From positions 1,674,001 to 1,738,000 of the forward strand of contig OZ037765.1 of NCBI GenBank assembly GCA_964035545.1: a stretch of DNA of 64,000 nt, written 5' to 3'. Below the pieces are notes generated by a model. The model did no database searches and had not been told where the DNA came from. It worked only from the letters and a program-made list of their open reading frames with translations. Below are positions 44,560 through 63,824 of this stretch, one piece after another (the stretch's first letter is position 1; each line of letters begins with the position of its first letter). The stretch comes from Bugula neritina (Eukaryota > Animalia > Bryozoa). The translations under genes and the position numbers were made by a program.

Positions 44560-47441
44560 ATTATAAGGCTGAGAAACTAAATCTAAAATTAAATAGATAA
44601 TTTTTGCATTCACACAAGGTTTGTTGATTATATTTGTGTTTTATTGAATGTTCCTAAATTTATTTGTAGTGATTTTATTAAACCATGCAAAAGTCTGTCA
44701 GTTTAACTTCAGATATGTATTTATTTAGTCAGCTTTTATTAGTCACTTTTTATAATATATTTTAAAATTAAAGCAGCTAGTTTGCCATTTTCTATGACAA
44801 TAAACTGCAAGAAATAAATCTAAAAAAATTTAGAATTAGCAAAAGTTTGAAACCTTGTTTGTATTTGATGTTTTTTTTAAAAAACTTAAACGATACTATT
44901 TTGTAAAGCTAACTTTCTGGTAACAAAATTTCAGTTTTTCAAAACTAAAATTGGACATTCAGTTATATAATCTTACGATGAAAAGTTATCGGTGGATAAT
45001 ACATCTCTGCATGTATTCTATAATCTGCTAAGTCAAATAACTGCAAGCATAAAAGAATATTTTGACAATTTTTGATGCACAAATAAAAAAAAGTAATAAC
45101 TTTAAGTTTTAGTTTTAATTTCTATAGGAAATTTGTTATGTATTACTTACAAACTTTTGAATTTTACCTTAATTTAGTTACTCTTATTTGTCTAATGCGT
45201 TATTATCATATATTATAGTCTAACAAACTGTTGCTTCTTGAGCTTATGAAAGTAGTTTTATCTCAGGAGCAACTCCAATTATTTTTAATTGCTGAGGAGT
45301 ACAAAATATTGCAACTGTTCTAAATAATGCTATTTTTAGCAGACATTTGCAAAATAACCTTGCTCAAAAAACAAAAAAAAAATTAAAAATTATTTAAATG
45401 GTAAAGAAAATCAAAACTCTCACTTTTGCATATAACAGTAAAATCATTCTTTGTGTTTATTCATTTACTCTGATTATACAGAGTTTTGTGACTATGCCCC
45501 CATCATCCTCATCACACAGAAAGACAAAAAGAGAGGTGAGAGCTCAATCAGACCAAATTACTGATCTACAAGAAACTCTATCTAAATTACAGGAGGAAGT
45601 GAAAACTTTAAGAAGCCAAATGGAAATCTGGTTTAATGCCATGTTACAAAGTGTAAGTTTGATTCGGAACATAAATAATAACACTAACTTGAAATACTTG
45701 ATGCTTGGAAACTGTTTTTTGAGAATAGTGAATGAGCATTCAAAATTAGATTTACAAACTTATATCAATAATTTTTTAACAATTTATTGACTAACCTTTA
45801 AATCATAGCTAAAAATTGATTTAAGGGTCATAACATGTGGCGTAAAAGTGATTTGTATCTATATAATGGGTTTTCTAACATGGGCTTATTTCAATAGTGT
45901 AGCTATGTTAAATATGTAGGCATGTATATAGAGCAACATTACCATCTTTAAGGGAGATATGTGCAATGCTGGCTGTTTGAGAGCATGTAACCTGTTCCAA
46001 CACTCATTGTGGCTTCAAATTAGTCTAGTCAACTGAATAGCTTAAGCCAGCAAGCATAAATGGAATGCAAGAAATAAACAATTTACAAAAAAAATACTTT
46101 CAAAGTACCAATAGGCAGTGGCACATAAATGTTTTCTGTCTGACTTGCAGCTGTTGGAAGACCCTCCAGTAAGGAGCATAAAGGAGACAGGAGCTGACCA
46201 CATTGAAGCCATGATTAGAAGTCTTAAGACATCTGGTATGAGGTTTTCTATATTATGATATTAGATGTAAAAAATATTCCCATAAGTTTATAATCACTAT
46301 CCCTGTCAGAACCCCTAATGGAAAGGGGCTGTTTTAGAATGAGGCACAGTAGCAATTATGACTGAATGCTCTTCCTAATATTACTGCAGGTGTTTCACAT
46401 GAACCACTAACCTTGTAATTACTGGGCCAGCACTCTAACGGCAGTTCCCTTATGCCTTCCTAGATGCAGTCATCTTTTTAAAGAAACATTCCAAGACAAA
46501 CATTAGTATACAGAACCAAACAGTTCTGTCAGTCAAATACAAAGTATATTGCGCAATTATTCAAGGTGTCTAATTTCCAAGGAGATGCACTAGACTAAGT
46601 ATTATCGTTACATAAGATAACATCTCACCACAGAATAAAAGATATGGAAGGTTCCAATAGATGGCATCAACTCTTTCAATAACATACAATATTTCCTTAC
46701 AATAAAGGTATTTCTCTATCATATAGCCTACGCAAATATGCAACTGAGATATACCTAAACATTTACAATAAATACTAGTTGATTCCATGAGATCTTATTG
46801 ATTTATTAATGTGACTTCAATAAGTTTTAGTAAAGCTATAATTTTTTCAGAAATGGTATAACCACACCATAACAATAACCAGCTGAGTTAAGGACGGAAC
46901 ATCTTAGCTAACATGAAGATTCTTGCTCTGAGCCTAGTCTGAGCTGTCCCTTAATTGTGATATTTATACTTGACCCAGAATTATAATCAAATAAACAAAC
47001 AAACACACCAATCACTTTTATCTTTTCATTTAAGCTATAATGTAGGGCTTACTTTTTTGTTTTAAATTAATGCTTTGAAACATTATTTAAAAGTTTCAAA
47101 GCACTACAGAATCAAAACCAAGACATATATTTCTAGGTCAGCATGTTTAGTGGTTGTTTTTAAAGGTTTATGGCGCCAGCCTTAAGTATTATGTTTTAAT
47201 GGACGACATGCAAATATTGTTGTTACAATGTATTCTAGGAGTGAGAAGAGCTACGAGGAGAAGTGGAGAACCTGGTAAAGATGGAGTACCTGGCAAAGTT
47301 GGAGAACCTGGTAAGGATGGAAGAGATGGAAAACCGGGTAAAAGTGGTACAGATGTAGGACTTGGAGAAACTGCAAATGATTCACCTGATGATGAAAAGG
47401 CAACTAATTGTTCCAGCAGTTTGCTAATCCACCCTGATTAA
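44560..47441 (+). pseudogene. Paralog A: decayed coiled-coil + short collagen gene
   Basis: Exons at ~45482-45652, 46151-46235 and 47239-47441 are homologous to paralog B. The start exon near 44565 has ATG>AAG and no GT donor, the exon 2 acceptor is lost (tttag>ttcat), and the first Gly-X-Y triplets carry Gly>Arg. A residual ORF runs from ATG 45494. Confidence 0.65.
46284..46450 (-). mobile_element. tRNA-derived SINE, older copy
   Basis: Reverse complement matches the SINE core (taggaagagcattcagtcataattgct..gtgcctc) and 3' end (cagggatagtgattataaactt) of the copies at 57155 and 58683. Confidence 0.8.
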
Positions 47442-47848: not shown

Positions 47849-48290
47849 AGTTTCATCCTAGCTAGACGCTATAGGCCAAATTTCCCACTTGGACACTATT
47901 TATTTGTTTTAGTACAATATATATTTTACGTACAATTTATTTGAATATTATTGAAATATTTGTATATTTAAATAAACTTGGATCAATTGCTGCTTGTTAT
48001 CTAACATATAAATAAATTCCTGTGATTTGCATTAACTTATTAATTTTGCATATTCTATACTTCTTGTTGTTTGAAAAAATAGTTCGTTAATAAGTATATT
48101 CATTAAAAATAATGTCTATTATTAATGTATTACTGTTACTGACTATTATTCAAGATACTTTATATTAGCTGTTAGCTATTTAGCAACAAACACAGCAGTT
48201 GCATAAGCAGCATAGCTATATACATTATCATGATACCAAAATAAAATTTAAGGTCTAACTGGGAAGCGCCTATATAAGTGGGATGACACC
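47849..48290. mobile_element. MITE family 1 (GG..CC ends, 8-bp TSD; Merlin-like by end pattern)
   Basis: Ends agtttcatcc / ggatgacacc; TSD gttgtaac at 47841-47848 and 48291-48298; empty site in the paralogous segment near 44029. Confidence 0.85.
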
Positions 48291-48863: not shown

Positions 48864-51800
48864 ATGGCTGGAAAACTAAACCTCGCAGGTAAATAGATAA
48901 CTTTTGCATCCATATACAGTTTATTCATTAGATTTATGCTTCATTGAAAGCTTCTAAATGTTTACGGCTATAGCTTTAGTTAAGCTGCCAAATTGACTTC
49001 AAATATACATATTTTCAGTCAGAGTTTAACCATAGATTTCTAAAATTAAAGCAGGTTATAATTTGGCTCAGCTAAAATATAAAGGTTGGTTTGCTATGGA
49101 ACAAAATTAAATATTACAGTGAAATAATGCTAAAGAATAACAAAACCGATAACCTAAGACCTATATAGATTTTTTACATTTTGTGTCTTTCTTCTAAAAA
49201 ATACAACATTTATTTAGTAAAAAACACTTTCTGTTGGTTATTTTTTAAAAAGTTCCAAAATTTCAAACTCAAAATAGGACATCCAGTTATGTAGTCTTAC
49301 AATGGAAAGTTGAAGGTGAATAGTACAGGACTTGACATTTCTGTTTTCTATAATTTGCTAATTTAAATAGCTGTAACCATGAAAGAATATTTTGACATTT
49401 CTTGATATATAAATTGAAAAAAAGCAATAATCACTCGATCCAGAATTGCTTTTGATTAGTATAGGATGTTGCTTATGCAGCCATTACAGTAGTCATATAA
49501 ATTTGTCAAATATTCCGTGCGGTTTTAATCCCCTTTATGTTAATGTAGCTACTCTGCTTTGTTTAATGCAGTATTATGTGTTATAGTTTAATATATGGAA
49601 AATTGCTAGTTCATAAGCTTATGTCTTATGAAAGTAATTTCATTCCAAAAATGACTCTAGTTATTGTTAAAACTTAATTAAACATAGTCAAAAAGTGTCA
49701 TATTTTTATATGGTAGTAAAGTTTGTCACTTTTTTTATCATAACAGTAAAATTAGTCTTTGTGCTTATTTAGCTACTCTGATTATAATGTATTTGATGAT
49801 CACACCATCATCATCACATTTTTTCAATGACGGCAAAAAGGCAAGAAAAGCTGTGAAAGAGCAAGCAGGCAACATTGAAGATCTACGAGCGAAGAATTTA
49901 AGATTAGAAGAGAAAGTAAACCAAATGAAAAATTTGCTTGATGGAAACCTAAAAACACAGATTTCAAGACTAGAAGAGAAAGTAAACACTCAATCTGACC
50001 AAATTACTGATCTAAAAAAAACAGTTTCCGGATTAGAGGAGGAAGTGAAAACTTTAAAAAGCCAAATGGAAACTTGGCTTAGTGCCACGTTACAAAGTGT
50101 AAGCTTGATCTTGAGCATGAATAATAATCCTTGCTTAAGATACTTGATATAGTAAGGCTTGCAAAGTATTGTCTGAAAATGGTGAATGAGCCTGTAAAAT
50201 TTGATTTAAAAACTGAAATTAACGAATGTTTGATATTTCATTAAGACACCCTCAAACCCTGACTATAAAATTATGATTTGAGTATTTTAATATGTGGCAT
50301 AGGAGTGATTTGGATCTCTTAGGCTTGATTCAACAGTGGGGCTATGTCAAATATATACGTATATAGAGTAAAATTTCCATCTTTAGGAGAGATATGTGCA
50401 TAATGTAGGCAGTTTCAGAACGTGTAGCCTATTTTTACACTGGTTGTGGTTTCGGCAATAGTCAGCTGGTGGCTTGAGCAGGAAAACATAAATTGAATAC
50501 TTACAATATGGAAAAATTAAGCTAGAAATATTGATTTACCTAGTAGAGTATGTAAATGTTCTCTGTTTGACTTGCAGCTGCTGGAAGACCCTCCTGTAAA
50601 GATCAATGCAGGCAAGAAAGAGGCTGAACACATTGAAGCCATGATTAACAGTCTTAAGACATCCGGTATGAGACCTTCTAAGTTATAATACTACTAAATA
50701 GTTACTGCAAGCTGCTACAATGTATCTTGCAGATATAGTAAAATACTGTTTGAGAAAATCTCAATTTTTTACTGCAGTTCAAATAAAACATTTAAATTAG
50801 GTAGTTTATTTACCATATAGTTGCTTTTATTCTAGATAATTACGAGACATTCAAAATCTTAACTGCTTTTTGTAAGCTATAATGGTATTACCATACAAAG
50901 AATTATATAATCATGTCTACTTTTAAAATTGTAAATAACCATAAGCTTTTACTTTTATGCGTCATACAATATTTCAATATGTAATTAGTTTGTTCCTTTT
51001 CTAAAATAAGGACAAATGAGCTAAATCGCGACTTTTTAGAGTGGCCATAGCTCTGAAGGACTTGATAAAAGTGTTCCTGGTTAACATAATGAAAATGTCC
51101 ACAATTGTTGTTAGATGGCATTAAATTCACATTTTTTTTAGTATTGGCATACGCTCTTGACACTCACCCCGTTTAAATAAAAGCCATGCGTTTTAGAATC
51201 GACTGTTAGTCTGCACAGAGTTTCTTTCTTCCAGAAAAGACAAGTCCAAATTATTCAGTTTTTTTTGCATGCCATAAAAGCAATTGGTGGCCCCAGTATT
51301 TTACTCCACCTACCCCACTCCACCTTTGCTCTAATAACCTAATTTATTGCACCCAAAAACTCAATTTTCATTATGTTTGATAAAGAACAAAAGAATTACA
51401 TATTAATTCATTTTATGATGCATAAATATAAAAGCCTTATAGTTATTAGCAATTTAAAAATAAAAATAATTGTAATTCTTTGTAATGCGATAGCTTATGC
51501 AAAATCTGTGTAATTATCTAGAACAAACACAGTTAGGATAAATCTGTTTTATTTGAACTGAACTTTTGACTTTTGAACTTTTGTAGCTTATAAGAAAAAT
51601 TAACATTATTTTTAATATCATGGCCTATGATTGAATGACTCACTTCTATTTGTGAAAAACTCAAATACCAACTTCCGTGGAACAAACTATTTGAACTTTG
51701 TTTTATGACACGGTTCCCACTGCCCAAATCTGTCCACACAATCCAAAGTTAGGAAACATGAGTCATAAGCAATAAAATATTACATTCACAGGCACAACAG

Positions 51801-53171
51801 CTTTTTGTTTGTTAATCATATTATAAATAATTTTGATTTGCAATGAATTGGAAAATACTGCTCGATGACTAAAGGTAGATCTAGTTTCTAAGGTTATTTG
51901 CGTATAAGCATAAAATAAGATCTAGCTACGTTTATAGGACAAAGGGATGGAAGTTTCCAATAAGTATTAGTTTCTCCAATAATGCCGACCCAAAGATACT
52001 TCAGCATTTTGAATATTTCCTTGATGCATAGGACACCCAGTTGGACAATGTCACACCAGATTTACTAACTTTAAAGATTAATCTTAATAATCCATTTCCA
52101 AATAAAAGTGCTTTTCACTCAAAAATCAATTCCAACGCAATGCTTACAATTATTATTAAAAATAACTGTAGCACCATAACATACTTTTTATAAATGAACA
52201 ACAGGGATACAGAAACATAGTTTCCTTGCTAATATACTTATATATTACTTTCAAACAAGCAGTCAGGAGTACAGTGTCCTAAGACTAATAAGTCTAACAA
52301 AAAAAACAATTTTTCATTTTTAGCTTATGGTATTTAATAATAGTTTGCTTTGACAATTTAAGGATATCATTTATTTTCAAAATCAAGTTTCTTGTAACAA
52401 ACTAAAAAAGTGTTGATGAGTTTTGTTTTGTAATTGCTATTGCATTGCTACAGACAAAAACCTTAATAGTGGCAGTTAGCGAAAATTAGGTAGGTCATAT
52501 ATTGCAATTAGAGAGTGAGTCTAAGTGAGATTATGGAATTAGAAGTTGAATTAACTGAAACTCATCAAAACTTTTGTTCTGAAACACATTTTAAGAGCAA
52601 CCAGCTGAGTCAAGGGCAGAGCACTTTGGCTAACATGCAGATTATTGCCCTGGGTTTAGCCTGAGTCTGTCTCTGAATCACTTGACCCAGAATTATAATC
52701 CAATGAACAAACACATCAATCACCTTATTTTTTTCGTATAGCTGAAAATTTCTGTAAGAAGCTTAACACTTTGTTCATGAACTATAATGTACCTTTTTTG
52801 TCCTGAATTAACTTTGAAACACTTTGTAAATTCATCAAAGCACCATAAAAATAAAACTGTGCACGTATATTTTTAAGTGTCCTTGTTGTTTGGTTTTGAA
52901 GCTTTGTGACAAATTAACTTGTCATTTTTATCGTCAATAATGAGCTAAAAACATTATAGGAGTGAGAGGAGCCACAGGAAGAGATGGAAAGCCTGGTAAA
53001 GATGGCAAAGATGGAGAACGGGGTAGAGATGGAAAAGATGGAATTCATGGTAAAGATGGAAAAGATGGAGTTCATGGTAAAGATGGAGTTCATGGTAAAG
53101 ATGGAAAAGATAGAGAACCTTGTATTGTTGAAAGATGTATTTCCTGGTTAATAAAACCAGTTTTTCGCTAA
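48864..53171 (+). CDS. Paralog B: secreted coiled-coil + 17 Gly-X-Y protein (216 aa) with no C-terminal domain
   Basis: Exons 48864-48888, 49773-50098, 50578-50665, 52960-53171, all GT-AG and in phase: MAGKLNLAATLIIMYLMITPSSS (signal-like), heptad region, LLEDPP exon, GVRGATGRDGKPGKD.. then stop. Confidence 0.8.
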
Positions 53172-55520: not shown

Positions 55521-58500
55521 ATGAATTGGAAGTTAACATTTTCAGGTAAGTTAGTAGAATTTGTAATTTGTTAGATTTATATGCTTTAAGATAATTTTTG
55601 AAGCTAAAATTAGTTTTGAAAATTTGATGTAAGGAACTCAATTAAACTTTGTAGAAAAAGTTAGCTGTTGAGTTGAATCTGAAAAATCTTTCAAAATATC
55701 TTATAAGCTGGAGTCTATAATAAATATCCGTTTAAGTGATCTATTTTATAAATAACTTAAATAATGAGTGTCATAGTGTAGTAATATATCTCTACAGAAT
55801 GTAAAAGAAAGTCAAAGATTGTTTTAGTATAACTACTTTTACCATTTTTGAATTTTGTGAATTCAGATAACTGCAACCATAAATAAAAGTCTAGGATTCA
55901 AATAGTGATATGACTTTCCAATTTATTACACTGCTATTGTAGTATACTCACATATACATTTTATATTTAGTATGGTTTTTGTTTTATGTATGCGAACTTA
56001 TTAGTTTACACAACCTGTTGATACTTATGTATATTTAGTTGCCCTGACTGCGCTCTTCGTGATGCAATCATTGTTACATCTCAGTTTAAAGAATGCCATA
56101 GAAGTTCAAACAGCCAGAATTTCTGAGCTGGAGAGAAGTAATTTAGAGCTGGAGGAAAGGCTATCCACTCAAAAGCTTCAGGCAGAAACCTGGCTCCATG
56201 CCATTCTATACAGTGTAAGTTTACATGTTCCTGGAGTGTTTACAAGATGTCTATACTAGGTTTTAAAGAATCCCTGACACATTTTATTTGTACAGTAATA
56301 AAATATTCATATATATCCTTGCTATTATCTACAAACTTTTTGGAGATTGTGTGCTCAATAAGTTATAATAAGTTTTGTGCAAACATGTCTTGAATTAATT
56401 TAGGATTTCTGATGGTATGCTGATGCCGTTTCTAGTCTACTCTGAAGCCCATGGTATACTATAGAATTAATAGTTATTATAGCTAACTTCCATTGCATGC
56501 TATTCTTTGCTGCTACAACACACAACTTGTTCACTGAGCTCGCTTGAATGTGTAAAGCTTTAAAAGCCAGCTCATTTATGTAGCTGTCTGCTGCTTGATA
56601 AAGTGTGTCAGAGATTATTTAAGAAGCTATTTTTGTCAACAGTAAATTTTTTTCAAGAAACCTGGTGGCCAAAAGTTTAAAACTTGAATCATGTTGATTT
56701 GAGAGGCTTTGAAGTAAAGCTCCACATGTTTCCTGTGGTGGTGACTGGTACATAGGCTAGGTCTTCTCTGCTTGTAGCTGTTGGAGGACCCCATCGTATC
56801 CAAAGTACACGAGACAGAGGATGGGCACCTCGAATATATGATTGACATCCTTCGAGTATTTGGTATGTTGCCTTCTAACTAATGTAATACAAGTTATACA
56901 ACTAATAAAGTATGTGTATCTAGCCAGATCATGTAGCAAATTTAGTTTGTAAAAACCGGATTCTTTGTCAGTAGCATGCAGCTGCATTAGAACAGCTGGT
57001 CAAACAGCAAAGTGATGGCCGATGCGCTAGACTTTTGGACAAGATGTACGACAGTACACACTTTCGTGGCCTAACAAAAAAAGGTGAAAAATGAATGTGA
57101 ATTTCTTATGGTTAATAAATCACAGAACTTAGGTTATATATATCTGATTATTATTGATCTAGGGGGTAAAGCATTTGCCTAGTAAGCACGGAGGTCATGG
57201 GTTCAAGCCCGGACAAAGGTCATTGGTGATGTTAGGAAGAGCATCCAGTCATAATTGCTCCTGTGCCTCATTCAAATAAGTCCTTAGCCCGCTTTGACAA
57301 AAACCCCTTCCATCAGGGGTTTCTCACAGGGATAGTGACTATAAACTTCCGTGAGTGAGTTTTTATTGTTTTTACATTCAGAAACAAGATGGATTAAAAT
57401 TGGGTCATGTTGGCTGGTTCAACATTATTTGAATGGAATCATAAGAAAAGTTTGCGGGTCATACCAATTATTTTACCGGACAGCTGATTTTTAGATTAAA
57501 ATTGTAAATTGTATATCAATGTTAATATAGAAGTGAGGTTTTTTAATGGTGGTCACTGTTTAAATGAAAATAGCTGTGACTCGAGTTATAAGTAATAATT
57601 TTGATACTCAATAGATTAAATTTGGGAAAATTTTCTATGATGAGGCTTTGCTATGGGTATATCCAAGTAAAAATACTGCGTAATAACTCAAACTGTCTAA
57701 TTCCAAAGCAGATGTGCTCAGTATTACTAAAGAGTATCAGATAACATAAGTTCTTATAACAATACAAAATATTTTTGACACAATGTTAAAGCGATCTGTC
57801 TCTATCATGGCATATACCAGCGTGCCATTGTAGTTATAACATGTACCTAGCCATGTAGAATATCCTTATTCAAATTGCTTAATAGATAGATAGATTAGAT
57901 TACATGTATTATAAAACATACCTTTCATTACTTAAAAGATTGGACAAGTATATAACCTATATTTTTTCAACTAGCAGTCAAAGGCATTCCAGTTGGATGC
58001 TATTTATTTATTTTGGTACAATATATATTCTATGTGCAATTTATTTGAATATTATTGAAATATATGTTTATTTAAATAAACTTGGATTAATTGCTTGTTA
58101 TTTAGCACATATAAATAAATTCCTTTGACCTGCATTAACTTCTTAATTGCATTTTCTATACTTCTTGTTGTTTGAAAAAATATTTTGTTAATCAGTATTT
58201 ATTAATGACCATATCTATTATTAATTTGTTACTGCTTTTTTCCATACACATTTTCATGAAAATGGGAATACTATCCCAGATAATTTGTATTAGCTGTTAT
58301 TATAGCTATTATAAGCTATAGGTATTTAGTAATCAATGCAACATTTATATAGGTATGTTACTATATGTAATTGCACTAAAATAAATAAATAGCGTCTAAC
58401 TGGGAAATGTCTAACTGGGATGAAACCTAGCAGTCAAAGGCATCTTTGAAAAAGCAAGTTGAATGGCACAGCACAAAATATACTAGAAAGTAGAAAGTGT

Positions 58501-61500
58501 ATCAGCATTTTGCATTTATTTCAGGCCAAATGTTAGTCTGAGTTAATTGAGTTTAGTCATTGAACTGCATGTGATGGGAAATTAGCAGTCATGTTACCAA
58601 TATTTTCAATAATTTACAATAATTGGTATTTGCATGACAATAACTCGCATCAGTGAAATCATAATTTGTATTGGTAGGGTAGGAGCAGCCGTGGTCTAGG
58701 GGTTAAAGCGTTTGCTTTGTGAACACGAAGTCATGGGTTCGAACCCCGACAAAGGCCATTGGTGATGTTAGGAAGAGCATCCAGTCATAATTGCTCCTGT
58801 GCCTCTTTTGAACAAGTCCTTAGCCCGTTCTAATAAAAACTCTTTCCAACAGGGGATTCTCACAGCAACTATAAACTTGCGTGAGTATTGGTAGGGTAGT
58901 ATTTGGTATTTGTATGGAAATATATAAGGGGTATTAGTATTGGTATTAGATGAAACCTAAGTTACAAGGATGCTGTGACATGATACCTACTATTTCATAG
59001 CTAGGTCATCACGAGATTTTTCTAGAAACATGCTTTTAGAAATGAACAAGTGATATGAATTTCTTGGCTGACGTGCTCATTCACTGCTTTAAGATAGGCT
59101 TTCAGCGTCGACTAGAATTGATGAATTAACAGGCAGTGTTTTACTGTTTCAGAAGACTGAACTATATATATATACTTAGTTGATAGTAGACTGTTTCTTT
59201 GGTTCTTTTAAGATCTTTAGCCAACACATGAGGAAGAAATTCACATGTTGATGAAGAGTAGTCAGTTTTAGTATTCACACTATCATAATTATTTAATACT
59301 TTGCTTAGTAATTATCAACAAGTTATCATTTTCATTAGCAGACAACATTGTAGCGCGCAGTCTTTTTCTACTTCTCAGATCAATCTGGCGTCTTTCCATG
59401 GTCTTATTGACATGAGATCGATTTGAGTTCGAGCTCCACAGACCGACCAGCTCAAATTGACGGAGATCGATCTTTGGCGTCTTTCCATCGATCGATCTCA
59501 CTGAGATCGATCCATGGAAAGCCGGTGAATTGCTCCTGTGCCTCATCCAAATTAAAAGTCCTTAGCCCGCTTTAACAAAAACCTCTTCCATCAGGGGTTT
59601 CTCACAGGGATAGTGACTATAAACTTCCGTGAGTGAGTTTTTATTGTTTTTGCATTCAGACACAAGATGGATTAAAATTGGGTCATGTTGGCTGGTTCAA
59701 CATTATTTGAATGAAATCATAAAAAAAGTTTCCCCGGTCATACCAATTATTTTACCTGACAGCTGATTTTTAGATTAAATTGTAAATCGTATATCAATGT
59801 TAATATAGAAGCGAGGTTTTTTAATGGTGATCACTGTTTAAATGAAAATAGCTGTGACTCGAGTTATAAGTAATAATTTTGATACTCAATAGATTAAATT
59901 TGGGAAAATTTTCTATGATGAGGCTTTGCTATGGGTATATCCAAGTAAAAATACTGTGTAATAACTTAAACTGTCTAATTCCAAAGCAGATGTCTACTCA
60001 GCATTACTAAAGAGTATCAGATAACATGAGTTCTTATAACAATACAAAATATTTTTTACACAATGCTAAAGCGAATCTGTTTTCATCATGGCCTATACAA
60101 GCGTGCCATTGTATTTCTAACATGTATCTAGCCATGTAGAATAATGTATACTTATTCAAATTGCTTAATAGATAGATTAGATTACGTGTAATATAAAACA
60201 TACCTTTCACTACTTAGAAGATGGGACAAGTATACAACTTATATTTTAAACTAGCAGTCGGTGTCATCCGAGATAGACGCTTCCCAGTTAGAAGCTATTT
60301 ATATATTTTGGTACAATATATATTCTATGTGCAATTTATTTGAATGTTATTGAAATATATGTGTATTTAAATAAAATTGAATCAATTGCTTGTTATTTAG
60401 CACATATAAATAAATTCCTTTGATCTGCATCAACTTCTTAATTTTGCATTTACTATACTTCTTGTTGTTTGAAAGAATATTTTGTTGATAAGTATTCATT
60501 AAAGATAATATCTATTAATAATGTACTACTACTTTTTTCCATACACATTTCCATGAAAATGGGAATACTATCCCAGATAATTTGTATGAGCTATTATAGC
60601 TATTATAAGCTATAGCTATTTAGTAATCAATGCAACATTTATATAGGTATGTTACTATATGTAATTGCACCAAAATAAAAATAGCGTCTAACTGGGAAGC
60701 GTCCATCTGGGATGAAACCTAGCAGTCAAAGGCATCTTTGAAAAAGCAAGTGTGCCAGTTTACTTCATTTAGTACACACCCGCAAATTATGACCTAACAT
60801 TAAAGTTTGCTCAAAATCCATTGAAATTTACTATACATGGTATTTTTATGTGCTGGTTTTAACTACGCATAACAGAAAAGGCTGGGAGGGAATTCCCCAA
60901 CATTAAATCACAGGTCATTGTCATATGCATTTAATATTCTATATGTTCGACCGTAACCAAAACTAGCTGAATAATTAAGGAAAAACATGGGAAATGAAGC
61001 AAAATTAAAAAGAACTTTGATTATTTAGGTGTATTTATTGGTGTTTTGCTAGTTTTGGCCAAAAAAACTATGTTCATTACCAGCTAAATTGTGAAAAATA
61101 GCCAAAAACTGAAGATTTCGAGTGTGTACTAAATTGAGTAAAATGACCCAAGTTGAATGGCACAGCACAAAATATACTAGAAAGTAGAAAGTGTATCAGC
61201 ATTTTGCATTTATTTCAGGCCAATTGTTCGTCTGAGTTAATTGAGTTTAGTTATTGAACTGCATGTGATGGGAAATTAGCAGTCATGTTACCAATATTTT
61301 CAATAATTTACAATAATTTGTATTTGCATGACAATAACTCGCATCAGTGAAATAATAATTTTTATTGGTAGGGTAGTAATTGGTATTTGTATGGAAATAT
61401 ATAAGGAGTATTAGTATTGGTATTAGATGAAACCGAAGTTACAAGAATGCTGTGACATGATACCTACTATTTCATAGCTAGCTCATCACGAGATTTTTCT

Positions 61501-63365
61501 AGAAACATGCTTTTAGAAACGAACAAGGGATAGGAATTTCTTGGCTGACATGCTTATTCACTGCTTTTAGATAGGCTTTCAGCGCTAACTAGAATTGATG
61601 AATTAATAGGCAATGTTTTGCTATTTCAGAAGACTGAACTATATATATATACTTAGTTGATAGCAGACTGTTTCTCTGGTTCTTTTAAGATCTTTAGCCA
61701 ACGCACGAGGAAGAAATTCACCGACTAGTGCTAAAAGTAATGCCTTATTCACACTACAGCTCAAAGTAATGCCCTGTTCACACAACAGAACTTACCCAGA
61801 ATTCATATGCTAAGATTATAGTCGGCTTAACATCATTTCTTCATGCTACTCTGAGACAGCTGCTGCACAGATTAAGTTGATGAAGAGTAGTAAATGTTAG
61901 TATTAACACTAACCATGTGTAGCATGGGCTAATAAGCTAACAAACTGGATTACTGGGAGAGCATAGGATTAGTGACTCAATAGCAGTCTAACACTGCACT
62001 ACATATATTACAGGAGTAAGAGGAACTAAAGGGGAGCCGGGTAAAGATGGAAACCCTGGTAAAGATGGAGAGCTCGGTAAAGATGGACTCCCTGGTAAAG
62101 ATGGAGAGCCTGGCAAAGATGGAAGCCCTGGCAAAGATGGAAGCCTTGGTAGAGATGAAAAAGTTAACCTCCATGGTAAGTTATCATGGTGGTTAGTTAA
62201 TTAGATTATTACAACTTAATCTGTGCAGCAGCTGTCTCAGAGTAGCATGAAGAAATGATGTTAAGCCGACTATAATCTTAGCATATGAATTCTGGGTAAG
62301 TTCTGTTGTGTGAACAGGGCATTACTTTGAGCTGTAGTGTGAATAAGGCATTACTTTTAGCACTAGTCGGTATAATACTTCGGGCTACACCATTTGCACA
62401 TGAATATCAGAAGATTCAAACCAAATTTGTTTTTTTCTAAGGTCAAGGTCAAGATGAAATCTCTAGGAAGGGAAAATCTACTGATGGAACTCCAAATTCT
62501 TCAACTTCGAGATTGTTCAGTTTTAAGAAAAGTAAAGGAGATTCAGGAGTGGATGAAAGTGTTGGCCCCCCTGTACCAGTTGGAAAAATTAGTGCCAAAC
62601 CGAGAAAGATTCCCAAAAAGCTGAAAGGTGCTGTTGAATCAGTTGCTAGTGTAGGGAATACTGAAAGTGGTTCTGTATTCACAAGATGGGGTAGTAGTGA
62701 CTGTGGAGAGGAGTCAGATAGAATATATGAAGGCAAGCTACATAAAACTAGCTATATTTAACAACTACATGAAATGACATATCAAATGTAAAAAATGTCA
62801 AATACTTTCATAATCTTTTGAGAATGTTGTTAAAAGATTTTTTTAGGCTTTGTAGGCGGGTCTTGCAATGAGGGAGGTACAGGGGGCGGGACAAACTTTC
62901 AGTGTCTGCCTCTGATTGGTCCACAGTATTATCCAGAAAGTATAGAGAATGAGTTGTGGTACGGTTCCTGGATAAATGGACCTGAATACCAGAGTTATGA
63001 CTCACAGCTTTATTCTGACATGCCGTGTGCTAGATGTTACACCAAGACGCGGTCGGCTTTCTTGATGATTCCAGCTAAGAGAGATTGTCTTTCTGGGTGG
63101 ACAAAGGAGTACGAAGGTAAAAACCTAAGGCTAAATAGCTGAAATGGTAATAGAGTTGTTGTGTATCTATAGACTGTAGGTGTGGAATTTGAGACTTGTG
63201 TTCTAGTGCATGGTATAGGCCACTATTGATACTTTTATATTTTAAGCAATTATTTTCACTAGCGCTCGGGCGCGAGCACACAGCCACACACACACGCACA
63301 CGCACATGCACACGCACACGCACACGCACACGCACACGCACACACACACGCACACACACACACAA

Positions 63366-63396
<31 letters not shown>

Positions 63397-63824
63397 TGAA
63401 CGCACGCACAAACATGCTCACGCATGCACAAACATGCACACGCACACACACACACACACACACACCACACAAATGTGCACACACACATGCACACACACAC
63501 ACATGCACACACAAACATGCACATGCACACACCACACACACACACACCCGCACACACACACACACTCGCACACACGCACACACACACACACACCTTATTG
63601 ATGGAGAATTTTGTATACTTATAGGGTACTTAATGACCCCTCAAATAGACCACCCCCACCCTGGCACGTACGAATGTGTGGACGCCCACACTAAATATGA
63701 ACGAGGACGAGAAACAGATTTCTTTCACTTTGTTAGAGCTTCATGCGACGAAGATGGATACACGGAGAGTGGTCTTCTTTATTCCCCCAATAAGAATCTA
63801 GCCTGTGTAGTCTGTACAAAGTAG
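55521..63824 (+). CDS. Paralog C: short-chain collagen C4 (spongin)-like secreted protein, 402 aa, 7 exons
   Basis: Exons 55521-55545, 56039-56214, 56778-56862, 62014-62175, 62442-62732, 62847-63116, 63625-63824 total 1209 nt. Hydrophobic N-terminus, coiled coil, 16 Gly-X-Y, then FTRWG..C..YEGFVGG..GGG..CLP..EY..PCARC..LMIPAKRDCLSGWTKEYEGYLM..YECVD..LACVVCTK, which I recognise as the short-chain collagen C4 C-terminal domain. Confidence 0.88.
57155..57360 (+). mobile_element. tRNA-derived SINE
   Basis: A-box-like tgatctagggg, B-box ggttcaagccc, shared core, gagt tail. Confidence 0.85.
57988..58427. mobile_element. MITE family 1, left end damaged
   Basis: Same body as 60260-60719; right TIR ..gggatgaaacc intact. 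Confidence 0.8.
58683..58884 (+). mobile_element. Full-length tRNA-derived SINE with 15-bp TSD
   Basis: A box tggtctagggg, B box ggttcgaaccc; TSD gtattggtagggtag at 58668-58682 and 58885-58899; empty site at ~61363 in duplication copy 2. Confidence 0.93.
59529..59637 (+). mobile_element. SINE 3' half at the duplication junction
   Basis: Matches 57252-57360. Confidence 0.8.
60260..60719. mobile_element. MITE family 1, complete copy
   Basis: ~40-bp imperfect TIRs (ggtgtcatccgagatagacgcttcccagttag / ctaactgggaagcgtccatctgggatgaaacc); TSD tagcagtc at 60252-60259 and 60720-60727. Confidence 0.9.
60752..61149. mobile_element. MITE family 2 (398 bp, ~31-bp TIR, 4-bp TSD aagt)
   Basis: gtgccagtttacttcatttagtacacac..gtgtgtactaaattgagtaaaatgaccc; absent from duplication copy 1 (caagttgaatgg near 58456). 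Confidence 0.85.
61720..62371. repeat. Perfect 160-bp inverted repeat (61720-61879 / 62212-62371) enclosing the collagen exon
   Basis: Checked base by base, 160 of 160 complementary. Confidence 0.97.
63276..63592. repeat. (CA)n compound microsatellite
   Basis: Direct. Confidence 0.97.

What the first reader, a model, noticed from the sequence alone, without database searches (positions are those of the whole stretch)
61720..62371. Recent perfect 160-bp inverted repeat loops out exactly the collagen exon: a candidate exon-skipping or circRNA switch
Seen: arms 61720-61879 and 62212-62371 are perfectly complementary. The 332-nt loop holds exon 62014-62175 with both its splice sites. That exon is 162 nt, phase 1-1, and encodes the whole intact Gly-X-Y run. 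The sister copy of this intron segment (59237-59262, aaattcac-at-gttgatgaagag) lacks the left arm, so the left arm is a later insertion of an inverted copy of the downstream intron, with short microhomologies (ac, gttg) at its ends. Established: intronic inverted repeats flanking an exon promote skipping and back-splicing and are ADAR substrates. Inference: a template-switch event created an RNA stem that could give a collagen-less in-frame isoform, or a 162-nt circle whose collagen frame has no stop codon.
Basis: partly seen in the sequence, partly recalled or inferred. Interest (0 to 1): 0.8.

Follow-up and report, generated by a model that had tools for sequence, protein, structure and literature searches.

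The report
Young inverted duplication flanking collagen exon
In one lineage of the bryozoan Bugula neritina, 154 letters of intron were recently copied backwards into the intron on the other side of a small collagen-coding exon, so the exon now sits in the loop of a perfect 160-base hairpin; the DNA event is well supported, but whether it changes splicing could not be tested.

Summary
Arms 61720-61879 and 62212-62371 are 100% complementary. They are the only two copies in the 216-Mb genome. They enclose a 332-nt loop holding the 162-nt, phase 1-1 collagen exon 62014-62175 with both splice sites.

The left arm is missing at exactly the same point in three places: the paralogous intron copy in the window, and the orthologous locus in two assemblies of a sibling B. 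neritina lineage. The right arm is ancestral, unbroken and conserved there. The junctions carry 2-nt and 4-nt microhomologies. There is no target-site duplication, no ribozyme and no repeat family. This is a one-step templated inverted insertion by template switch or snap-back. It is younger than a lineage-specific 2.28-kb intron duplication.

An assembly artefact is unlikely. The assembly is HiFi at 132-fold, and the contig graph of the best-holding run breaks exactly at the arm edge with about 2.5-fold arm depth. That run is probably the assembly's own source, so it is not independent.

The splicing claim (exon skipping, circular RNA, editing) is untested, because no RNA run from a carrier was available. 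The skip is in frame. The circle's collagen frame has no stop, but also no AUG.

This is a neat natural example of a known mutational class, not a demonstrated switch.

The parts
61720..61879 (.). Left arm of the inverted repeat. The derived, inserted part is 61722-61875 (154 nt); the terminal AC (61720-21) and GTTG (61876-79) are shared with the pre-insertion sequence.
   Evidence: 100% reverse complement of 62212-62371. Absent from sister copy A and from orthologues L003 and L004.
62212..62371 (.). Right arm: the ancestral source sequence, in the 266-nt intron downstream of the collagen exon.
   Evidence: Present, contiguous with its flanks and 94-96% identical in the sibling lineage. Single unbroken contigs cross it in other samples.
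61880..62211 (+). The 332-nt loop. It holds 134 nt of upstream intron with the acceptor, the exon, and 36 nt of downstream intron with the donor.
62014..62175 (+). Collagen exon: 162 nt, phase 1-1, 16 Gly-X-Y triplets built on an 18-nt period.
   Evidence: family D1; Pfam Collagen 1.7e-9.
56778..56862 (+). Upstream exon (85 nt, ends in phase 1, donor GTATGT). It is the donor for both the inclusion and the skip joins.
   Evidence: Open frame and splice signals. 98/104 identical with conserved splice sites in L003.
56041..56214 (+). Hydrophobic and coiled-coil exon of the same gene. Its 5' boundary is uncertain.
   Evidence: weak ANG-1-like coiled-coil match; pN/pS 0.20 against L003.
62442..62732 (+). 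Downstream exon: a linker plus the start of the C-terminal non-collagenous domain. It is followed by a GC donor at 62733.
   Evidence: A contig of the probable RNA run X8 stops aligning at 62733.
62847..63116 (+). C-terminal domain exon, which looks like the type IV collagen NC1 (C4) domain.
   Evidence: 91-93% to B. neritina proteins; Atlas neighbours carry PF01413; pN/pS 0.23.
63625..63824 (+). Last coding exon, with the stop codon.
   Evidence: pN/pS 0.24.
59237..59258 (+). Empty site in sister copy A of the duplicated intron segment.
57253..59282 (+). Copy A of the 2.28-kb tandem intron duplication.
   Evidence: 91-97% to copy B. A single copy in L003 and L004.
59528..61911 (+). Copy B of the tandem intron duplication. 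It carries a ~400-nt repeat insertion (60751-61149) and the left arm.
   Evidence: very high contig depth over 60760-61159.
62296..62367 (+). A 72-nt element inside the right arm, perfectly conserved between lineages. It starts with a donor-like GTAAGT and holds two 29-nt tandem units. The new left arm is antisense to it.
   Evidence: (family D2).

Best explanation
This is a real and very young structural mutation in the Bugula neritina lineage that was assembled here. During replication or break repair, a growing DNA strand left its template at the point now numbered 61721/61722. It paired through a few bases of microhomology with sequence about 490 nt away in the next intron and copied 154 nt of it in reverse orientation. 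This was either a snap-back on itself or a switch to the opposite strand. It then returned to its template through a second short microhomology, replacing two bases.

The result is a perfect 160-bp inverted repeat whose 332-nt spacer holds the whole collagen exon of a short-chain-collagen-like gene.

Shown: the repeat, its uniqueness, the empty ancestral site in a paralogue and in an orthologue, the microhomologies, and the intact reading frames.

Inferred: the pre-mRNA will fold into a 160-bp duplex within a few hundred nucleotides of transcription, bringing the exon's own acceptor and donor together. The most likely outcomes are some back-splicing to a 162-nt circle, a matching amount of in-frame exon skipping, and editing or dicing of the duplex. 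I take it to be a neutral or mildly harmful new allele, not an evolved regulatory device.
For: - **Repeat:** perfect and unique.
- **Rarity:** no comparable repeat in 264 kb sampled.
- **Empty site:** found at the same nucleotide in sister copy A and in two assemblies of a sibling lineage, L003 and L004.
- **Polarity:** the right arm is orthologous, contiguous and 94-96% identical in that lineage. The left arm carries every window-specific substitution of the right arm.
- **Other samples:** Logan contigs L005 and L006 of two further runs, and contigs of X4 and X6, cross the right arm unbroken. A 31-mer graph would not allow that if an inverted copy existed there.
- **Junctions:** they share AC and GTTG and show no target-site duplication.
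- **Not a ribozyme element:** no Rfam family, including hammerheads, matches.
- **Assembly quality:** HiFi at about 132-fold, hifiasm, QV 53.7. The genome is identified by its 216.00-Mb span and 35.64-Mb longest scaffold.
- **Contig graph:** in the best-holding run X1, one contig starts at 62342. That is exactly 29 nt inside the outer arm edge, as a k=31 branch there requires. Arm depth is 122.7-182, against 48.8-48.9 for the flanks.
- **Gene is functional:** the frames are intact, with pN/pS of 0.20-0.24 in the coiled-coil and C-terminal exons against the sibling lineage.
- **Predicted stem:** -391 kcal/mol, z = -27.
- **Deaminase genes:** genes with an ADAR-type deaminase domain exist in the genome.
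- **Literature:** repeats of 30-40 nt flanking an exon suffice for circularisation in cells (PMC4201285). Template switching is a documented source of perfect hairpins (PMC5453318, PMC8794818).
Against: - No raw long reads could be inspected.
- X1 is probably the data set the assembly came from, so it is not independent. No second individual with the left arm was found.
- The zygosity of the allele is unknown.
- No RNA from a carrier exists among the runs offered, so every statement about the transcript is a prediction.
- Perfect arm identity could in principle be kept up by gene conversion rather than youth.
- The insert (154 nt) and the switch distance (about 490 nt) are larger than typical short template-switch events or yeast foldback insertions. 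The latter are mostly 5-34 bp (PMC11724301).
Confidence: 0.78

Rival explanations
1. One reading: the repeat acts as a splicing switch. It diverts a large share of transcripts (say a fifth or more) to a collagen-less in-frame isoform or to an abundant 162-nt circular RNA, with consequences for the protein.
For: Both splice sites lie in the loop, and the stem is far longer than the 30-40 nt shown to suffice (PMC4201285). The acceptor has a weak pyrimidine tract. The 5.15-kb upstream intron gives time for the stem to form. The skip is in frame. The exon is the least conserved part of the gene (80-85%), and in the sibling lineage it is out of register with its neighbours. That suggests it is dispensable or already alternative. 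The left arm is antisense to a 72-nt conserved intron element and would mask it.
Against: There are no RNA data. Stronger hairpins sometimes inhibit circularisation, and not all repeats work (PMC4201285). The stem does not bring the distant upstream donor (56862) near the downstream acceptor, so skipping is not directly favoured by geometry. The circle's open collagen frame has no AUG. Nothing indicates regulation, which 'switch' implies.
Confidence: 0.22
2. Assembly artefact: the left arm was created by a chimeric or palindromic read, or by the assembler, and does not exist in the animal.
For: No independent individual with the left arm was seen. X4, X6 and X8 have no contig on 61160-61959. 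X1 shows a few letters unlike the assembly at 61407, 61410 and 61676.
Against: HiFi at 132-fold coverage with QV 53.7. The insert is internal, 154 nt, bounded by microhomology and sits in unique sequence, unlike missed-adapter palindromes. The X1 contig graph branches exactly at the arm edge and gives about 2.5-fold depth on the arm. X4, X6 and X8 are a 5-8% divergent lineage, so their lack of the arm says nothing about the assembled animal.
Confidence: 0.04
3. A mobile element: two copies of a transposon end inserted head to head. This genome has such cases (Penelope-like stubs with hammerheads), and a MITE or foldback element is another possibility.
For: Earlier notes of this scan describe perfect inverted repeats of 87-147 bp in introns of this genome that are Penelope-like stubs. 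The big intron is full of high-copy repeats (depths of 1e5-1e6 in several bins).
Against: The genome holds only two copies. No Rfam hit, hammerheads included. No target-site duplication. The right arm is an ancestral, conserved part of a short intron in the sibling lineage, with no insertion boundary.
Confidence: 0.02
4. An old inverted repeat that was precisely deleted in sister copy A and in the sibling lineage. The two arms would be kept identical by gene conversion.
For: Gene conversion between palindrome arms is known. Long inverted repeats are deletion-prone.
Against: It needs two independent deletions with identical end points that leave a clean AT or AC dinucleotide. The 2.28-kb duplication itself is absent from the sibling lineage, so copy A and the orthologue are independent witnesses of the empty state.
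Confidence: 0.04

Closest known systems
Template-switch mutations that create perfect hairpins (four-point model; PMC5453318, PMC8794818, PMC10710096)
   Same: The inserted sequence is the reverse complement of nearby sequence. It replaces a few bases, arises in one step, and yields a perfect stem. The ancestral state is recoverable from relatives.
   Different: At 154 nt copied from about 490 nt away, this event is far larger and more distant than the short events those papers describe. The stem encloses an exon rather than forming a small RNA hairpin.
Microhomology-mediated replication-based rearrangement (FoSTeS/MMBIR; PMC2621351) and foldback templated inverted insertions at breaks (PMC11724301)
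   Same: 2-4 nt microhomology at both junctions, a templated insertion in inverted orientation, and no recombination signal or transposon hallmark.
   Different: Those models were built on kb-to-Mb copy-number changes, or on 5-34-bp insertions in yeast. This event lies between the two scales. Which polymerase or pathway acted cannot be told from sequence.
Intronic complementary sequences that drive exon circularisation (Alu pairs, mouse Sry repeats, engineered vectors with an inverted copy of one intron placed in the other; PMC4201285)
   Same: Complementary sequences sit in the two introns immediately flanking one exon, with both splice sites in the loop. The architecture is essentially that of a laboratory circRNA expression construct.
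   Different: No back-splice product has been observed. The repeat is unique sequence rather than a transposon pair. The exon (162 nt) is short. This is a bryozoan, with no circRNA data found here.
Head-to-head Penelope-like retroelement stubs in introns of this same genome
   Same: A perfect inverted repeat of about 150 bp inside an intron.
   Different: There is no hammerhead, no repeat family and no insertion boundary on the right arm. One arm is ancestral host intron.
Spongin short-chain collagens / 'short-chain collagen C4-like' proteins of invertebrates (recalled from memory; the NC1/C4 relationship is supported only by Atlas neighbours)
   Same: A short Gly-X-Y run followed by a cysteine-rich C-terminal domain. 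The nearest Atlas clusters of that domain carry PF01413.
   Different: Pfam itself gave no C4 hit on the single exons. The joined protein was not searched, so membership is open.

Membership tests
Templated inverted insertion / template-switch mutation | The new sequence is the exact reverse complement of nearby pre-existing sequence. | tested here: met
   160/160 complementary to 62212-62371, 332 nt away.
Templated inverted insertion / template-switch mutation | An ancestral state without the insertion can be demonstrated. | tested here: met
   Empty site in paralogous copy A and in orthologues L003 and L004.
Templated inverted insertion / template-switch mutation | Microhomology at the switch points, and no target-site duplication. 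| tested here: met
   AC (2 nt) and GTTG (4 nt) are shared between the insert ends and the empty site. The AT dinucleotide is replaced.
Templated inverted insertion / template-switch mutation | The source copy is the older one. | tested here: met
   The right arm is contiguous and conserved at 94-96% in the sibling lineage.
Exon-flanking complementary sequences that produce a circular RNA | Complementary sequences lie in the two introns bordering the exon, with both splice sites between them. | tested here: met
   Arms lie 134 nt upstream of the acceptor and 36 nt downstream of the donor.
Exon-flanking complementary sequences that produce a circular RNA | A back-splice junction (62175 joined to 62014) is seen in RNA and is resistant to RNase R. 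| not testable with these tools
   No RNA run from a carrier. The single read-laying run returned contigs only.
Structure-induced exon skipping | A skip junction (56862 to 62442) is present and more frequent in carriers. | not testable with these tools
   Same limits as above. Only the in-frame nature of the skip was verified.
ADAR substrate | A long perfect intramolecular dsRNA, and an ADAR-type deaminase in the genome. | tested here: met
   160-bp stem. A_deamin (PF02137) exons above the cut-off at four or more loci. ADAR and ADAT were not told apart.
ADAR substrate | Clustered A-to-G differences between RNA and DNA of the same animal in the arms. | not testable with these tools
   No carrier RNA.
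Transposon-derived inverted repeat (MITE, foldback, head-to-head Penelope-like stubs) | A multi-copy family with terminal repeats, target duplication, or a hammerhead. | tested here: not met
   Two copies only. No Rfam match. No target duplication.
Collagen (Pfam PF01391) | The Gly-X-Y repeat matches the family model above its cut-off. | tested here: met
   1.7e-9, 37.7 bits against a cut-off of 27.2. 16 uninterrupted triplets.
Type IV collagen NC1 (C4, PF01413) / spongin short-chain collagen family | The C-terminal domain matches the C4 model. | tested here: inconclusive
   No Pfam hit on the single exons at E <= 1. Atlas neighbours of exon 62849-63115 carry PF01413 (score 0.96). The joined domain was not searched.

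The most novel reading that the evidence does not exclude
The left arm is a segregating allele in European B. neritina. In a single mutational step it turned an ordinary collagen exon into one that is partly circularised and partly skipped. Carriers and non-carriers in the same harbour would then differ in a collagen-less isoform of a matrix protein. That would be a natural before-and-after experiment on how a circRNA locus is born.
Probability: 0.18. Interest if true: 0.65.

Novelty: new member of a known kind. Interest (0 to 1): 0.4.

Why it matters
Most exon-flanking inverted repeats known to drive circular RNAs are old transposon pairs, and their origin and effect cannot be separated. Here the mutation is fully polarised: source, target, junctions and empty sites are all known. 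It is perfect, unique, and probably only a few per cent of the age of the species split. It also mimics a laboratory circRNA construct.

If colonies with and without the left arm can be found, one RT-PCR would show what a de novo 160-bp intronic duplex does to splicing, editing and small-RNA production in a non-model animal. It also documents a template-switch event an order of magnitude larger than the short events usually catalogued.

If it proves silent in RNA, it remains an ordinary young structural variant.

Tried and rejected
1. **RNA evidence.** The one run search listed no RNA run of the assembled lineage. The one read-laying run returned Logan contigs only, with most joints and pieces not shown. 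Inclusion, skip and back-splice junctions could therefore not be read. The probable RNA run X8 belongs to the divergent lineage. It only shows contigs on the three exon bins, none on the intron with the right arm, and one contig stopping at the 62732/62733 exon end.

2. **Transcript-derived proteins spanning exon joins.** Word searches with exons 62849-63115, 62444-62731 and 62016-62174 found only three genomic ORFs (P0001-P0003) and nothing for the collagen exon.

3. **Search of JGI metagenome contigs for the left junction.** This came back blank. The control pattern for the empty site, which L004 from a JGI metagenome does contain, was also not found. The blank is therefore uninformative.

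4. **Transposon or ribozyme reading.** Rejected.

5. **An older RNA bridge around the exon.** The two conserved intron elements (61932-61990 and 62296-67) pair no better than shuffles do.

6. **Pfam on the three C-terminal exons.** No family found.

7. **Zygosity from contig depth.** Depths of unique contigs range from 49 to 99, so no conclusion is possible.

Full report
**What is there**

Reading 61500-62600 and the repeat finder show two arms, 61720-61879 and 62212-62371. A script confirmed them as exact reverse complements over 160 nt, with the match ending on both sides. The spacer is 332 nt.

It holds 134 nt of intron ending in an AG acceptor, then a 162-nt exon (62014-62175), then a GTAAGT donor and 35 more intron bases. 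Folded as RNA, 61690-62400 forms the full stem at -391.4 kcal/mol, against -181 +/- 7.7 for shuffles.

The arm occurs only at these two places in the whole 216-Mb genome. No other perfect inverted repeat of 50 nt or more lies in the window. None of 50 nt or more within 3 kb lies in 200 kb of neighbouring chromosome.

**The gene**

On the + strand the open frames and splice signals give these exons:

| Exon | Content |
|---|---|
| 56041-56214 | hydrophobic stretch plus coiled coil |
| 56778-56862 | short exon ending in phase 1 |
| 62014-62175 | collagen exon |
| 62442-62732 | linker, followed by a GC donor |
| 62847-63116 | C-terminal domain |
| about 63625-63824 | last exon, with the stop codon |

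- The collagen exon reads 16 uninterrupted Gly-X-Y triplets on an 18-nt period. It matches Pfam Collagen above its cut-off.
- It starts and ends in phase 1. Both the included and the skipped join keep the frame.
- The C-terminal exons have no Pfam hit singly. The nearest Atlas clusters of exon 62849-63115 carry the type IV collagen C4 domain. That fits my recollection of invertebrate 'short-chain collagen C4-like' proteins, but membership stays open.
- Other Gly-X-Y exons at 47265-47354 and 52959-53111 belong to upstream paralogues.
- All searches were made exon by exon, by reference. No joined model went to a search tool. Exons were joined only in a local script for the frame check.

**The organism**

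Exon 62849-63115 is 91-93% identical to two Bugula neritina proteins. The genome's span (216,009,554 bases in 321 records) and its longest record (35,640,107) match the Darwin Tree of Life assembly tzBugNeri2.1. That assembly was made with hifiasm from about 132-fold HiFi reads, at QV 53.7 (PMC11480708). This identification is an inference.

**Polarity of the event**

A self-comparison shows that the 5.15-kb upstream intron contains a tandem duplication of about 2.28 kb. Copy A is 57253-59282 and copy B is 59528-61911, at 91-97% identity. At the point where copy B carries the left arm, copy A reads AAATTCAC-AT-GTTGATGAAGAG.

The contig encoding P0001 comes from the 2020 draft genome of Virginia colonies (L003, GCA_010799875.2). 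A JGI metagenome contig (L004) is 99.9% identical to it. Together they give the orthologous locus of a sibling lineage, 78-95% identical to the window depending on the feature. Three things hold there:

- The 2.28-kb unit is single.
- The site reads GGAATTCAC-AC-GTTGGTAG, with no insert.
- The right-arm sequence is present once, continuous with its flanks, and 96% identical to both window arms.

Two Logan contigs from further runs of that lineage (L005, L006) run from inside the collagen exon through the whole right arm and on for about 1.2 kb. So do contigs of runs X4 and X6. A 31-mer graph would break such contigs if an inverted copy existed in those genomes.

Hence the right arm is ancestral. 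The left arm is a 154-nt insertion (61722-61875) replacing two bases, with AC and GTTG shared at the junctions. It is younger than the duplication, which is itself younger than the lineage split. Zero differences in 160 nt put the arm divergence below about 1.9% at 95% (my arithmetic), unless gene conversion keeps the arms alike. For comparison, copies A and B differ by 3-9%, and introns differ by 11-22% between lineages.

**Mechanism of origin**

The event is an inverted copy of unique nearby sequence, bounded by 2- and 4-nt microhomologies. It has no target duplication, no terminal repeats and no ribozyme. This is the signature of a template switch. Two routes fit:

- A nascent minus strand that had just copied the right arm and the exon folds back, primes on itself through CAAC/GTTG, copies 154 nt, and returns through GT/AC.
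- Equivalently, the strand switches to the opposite strand at a fork or during break repair.

This belongs with the template-switch and MMBIR/foldback literature (PMC5453318, PMC8794818, PMC2621351, PMC11724301). It is larger and more distant than the short events usually described there.

The transposon rival was worth testing, because earlier notes of this scan found Penelope-like head-to-head stubs forming perfect repeats in this genome. It fails on copy number, the missing hammerhead, and the ancestry of the right arm.

**Is it an artefact?**

I could not see raw reads. The best-holding run X1 lays contigs with no differences on every bin of 56760-62740. One contig begins at 62342, exactly 29 nt inside the outer edge of the right arm, as a k=31 branch at that edge requires. 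The arm has depth 122.7-182, against 48.8-48.9 for the flanking contigs.

X1 is probably the assembly's own source, so this is consistency, not independent proof. Taken with the HiFi depth and the microhomology-bounded internal position, I put the artefact reading at about 4%.

**What it does**

Nothing could be measured:

- No RNA run of the carrier lineage was listed.
- The contig tables do not expose the relevant joints.
- Protein word searches found no transcript-derived ORF across exon joins.

What can be said from structure is this. The stem will be complete 360 nt after the acceptor emerges. It encloses both splice sites without pairing them. That is the arrangement shown to suffice for back-splicing with repeats of only 30-40 nt, although stronger hairpins sometimes inhibit and some repeats fail (PMC4201285).

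The stem does not bring the upstream donor, 4.9 kb away, closer to the downstream acceptor. Skipping would therefore arise mainly as the linear by-product of circle formation, or from masking of intron signals.

The circle's collagen frame is open all round but has no AUG. The AUG-rich frame stops once per lap. Genes with an ADAR-type deaminase domain exist, so editing is possible.

**Context that bears on dispensability**

Between the lineages the collagen exon is the least conserved coding part (80-85%). The other exons are 91-95% identical, with pN/pS of 0.20-0.24 in the coiled-coil and C-terminal exons.

In the sibling lineage the exon is 163 nt in both assemblies, so it is out of register with its phase-1 neighbours. 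It stays in frame only from an AG 7 nt downstream, and its Gly-X-Y run is interrupted.

By contrast, the flanking introns hold the longest perfectly conserved runs of the comparison. One is 61932-61990, just upstream of the acceptor. The other is 62296-62367, inside the right arm, beginning with a donor-like GTAAGT. Conserved flanks around a fast-evolving small exon are what regulated cassette exons look like in other animals (from memory). The new left arm is antisense to one of these elements. This raises the chance of some effect on splicing, but it is inference.

**Verdict**

The genomic interpretation is supported and sharpened. The functional interpretation is plausible but untested. This is a new, well-polarised member of a known mutational class, and an attractive natural test case rather than a demonstrated switch.

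Noticed in passing
L003:9069-9231 (orthologue of window 62014-62175); the same sequence in L004:9189-9351: In the sibling B. neritina lineage the collagen exon is 163 nt, one more than here. From the shared acceptor it runs into a stop. It is in frame with its phase-1 neighbours only from an AG 7 nt downstream, and its Gly-X-Y run is interrupted. The other exons are intact and under purifying selection.
   Followed up: partly
window 62296-62367 and 61932-61990: Two intron stretches flanking the collagen exon are perfectly conserved between the lineages (72 and 59 nt), while synonymous sites differ by 11-20%. The downstream one starts with a donor-like GTAAGT, holds two 29-nt tandem units, and folds modestly on the + strand (z = -2.8). 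There is no Rfam match and no mutual complementarity.
   Followed up: partly
window 57253-59282 and 59528-61911: A tandem duplication of about 2.28 kb inside the 5.15-kb intron, at 91-97% identity, is absent from both sibling-lineage assemblies. Copy B carries an extra ~400-nt high-copy repeat at 60751-61149.
   Followed up: partly
window 62733-62734: The intron after exon 62442-62732 starts with GC (AAG|GCAAG) in this genome but with GT in the sibling lineage. This is a T-to-C change at a splice donor that leaves a usable GC-AG intron.
   Followed up: no
window 60260-60323 / 60657-60719: A second, imperfect inverted pair (65 nt, 86%, 333 nt apart) looks like the ends of a small MITE-like element. 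A related element lies at 57989-58234 and 47885-48135.
   Followed up: no
window 57160-57359, 58560-58959, 59360-59759, 60760-61159: Summed contig depth in four runs reaches 1e5-1e6 in these bins, so the big intron is largely made of very high-copy repeats. Many contig joints there come from other copies.
   Followed up: no
window 63276-63593: A long imperfect CA/CACG microsatellite fills most of the last intron of the gene.
   Followed up: no
window 46151-47354 and 49925-53111: Paralogous exons (coiled-coil-like, 85-nt-exon-like and Gly-X-Y) lie upstream. This is a tandem family of short collagen-like genes. No copy of the C-terminal domain exons was found for them in the window.
   Followed up: partly
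runs X4, X6, X8 laid on window 56760-62740: X4 carries the same organism label and study as the best holder. Even so, it holds only a 5-7% divergent version of the locus, with many bins empty, like the 2016 symbiont-metagenome runs. More than one cryptic lineage therefore sits under the species name in public data.
   Followed up: no
Metagenome-contig collection: An exact pattern that L004 (a JGI metagenome contig) contains was not returned by the collection scan. Blanks from that scan for this organism carry no weight.
   Followed up: yes
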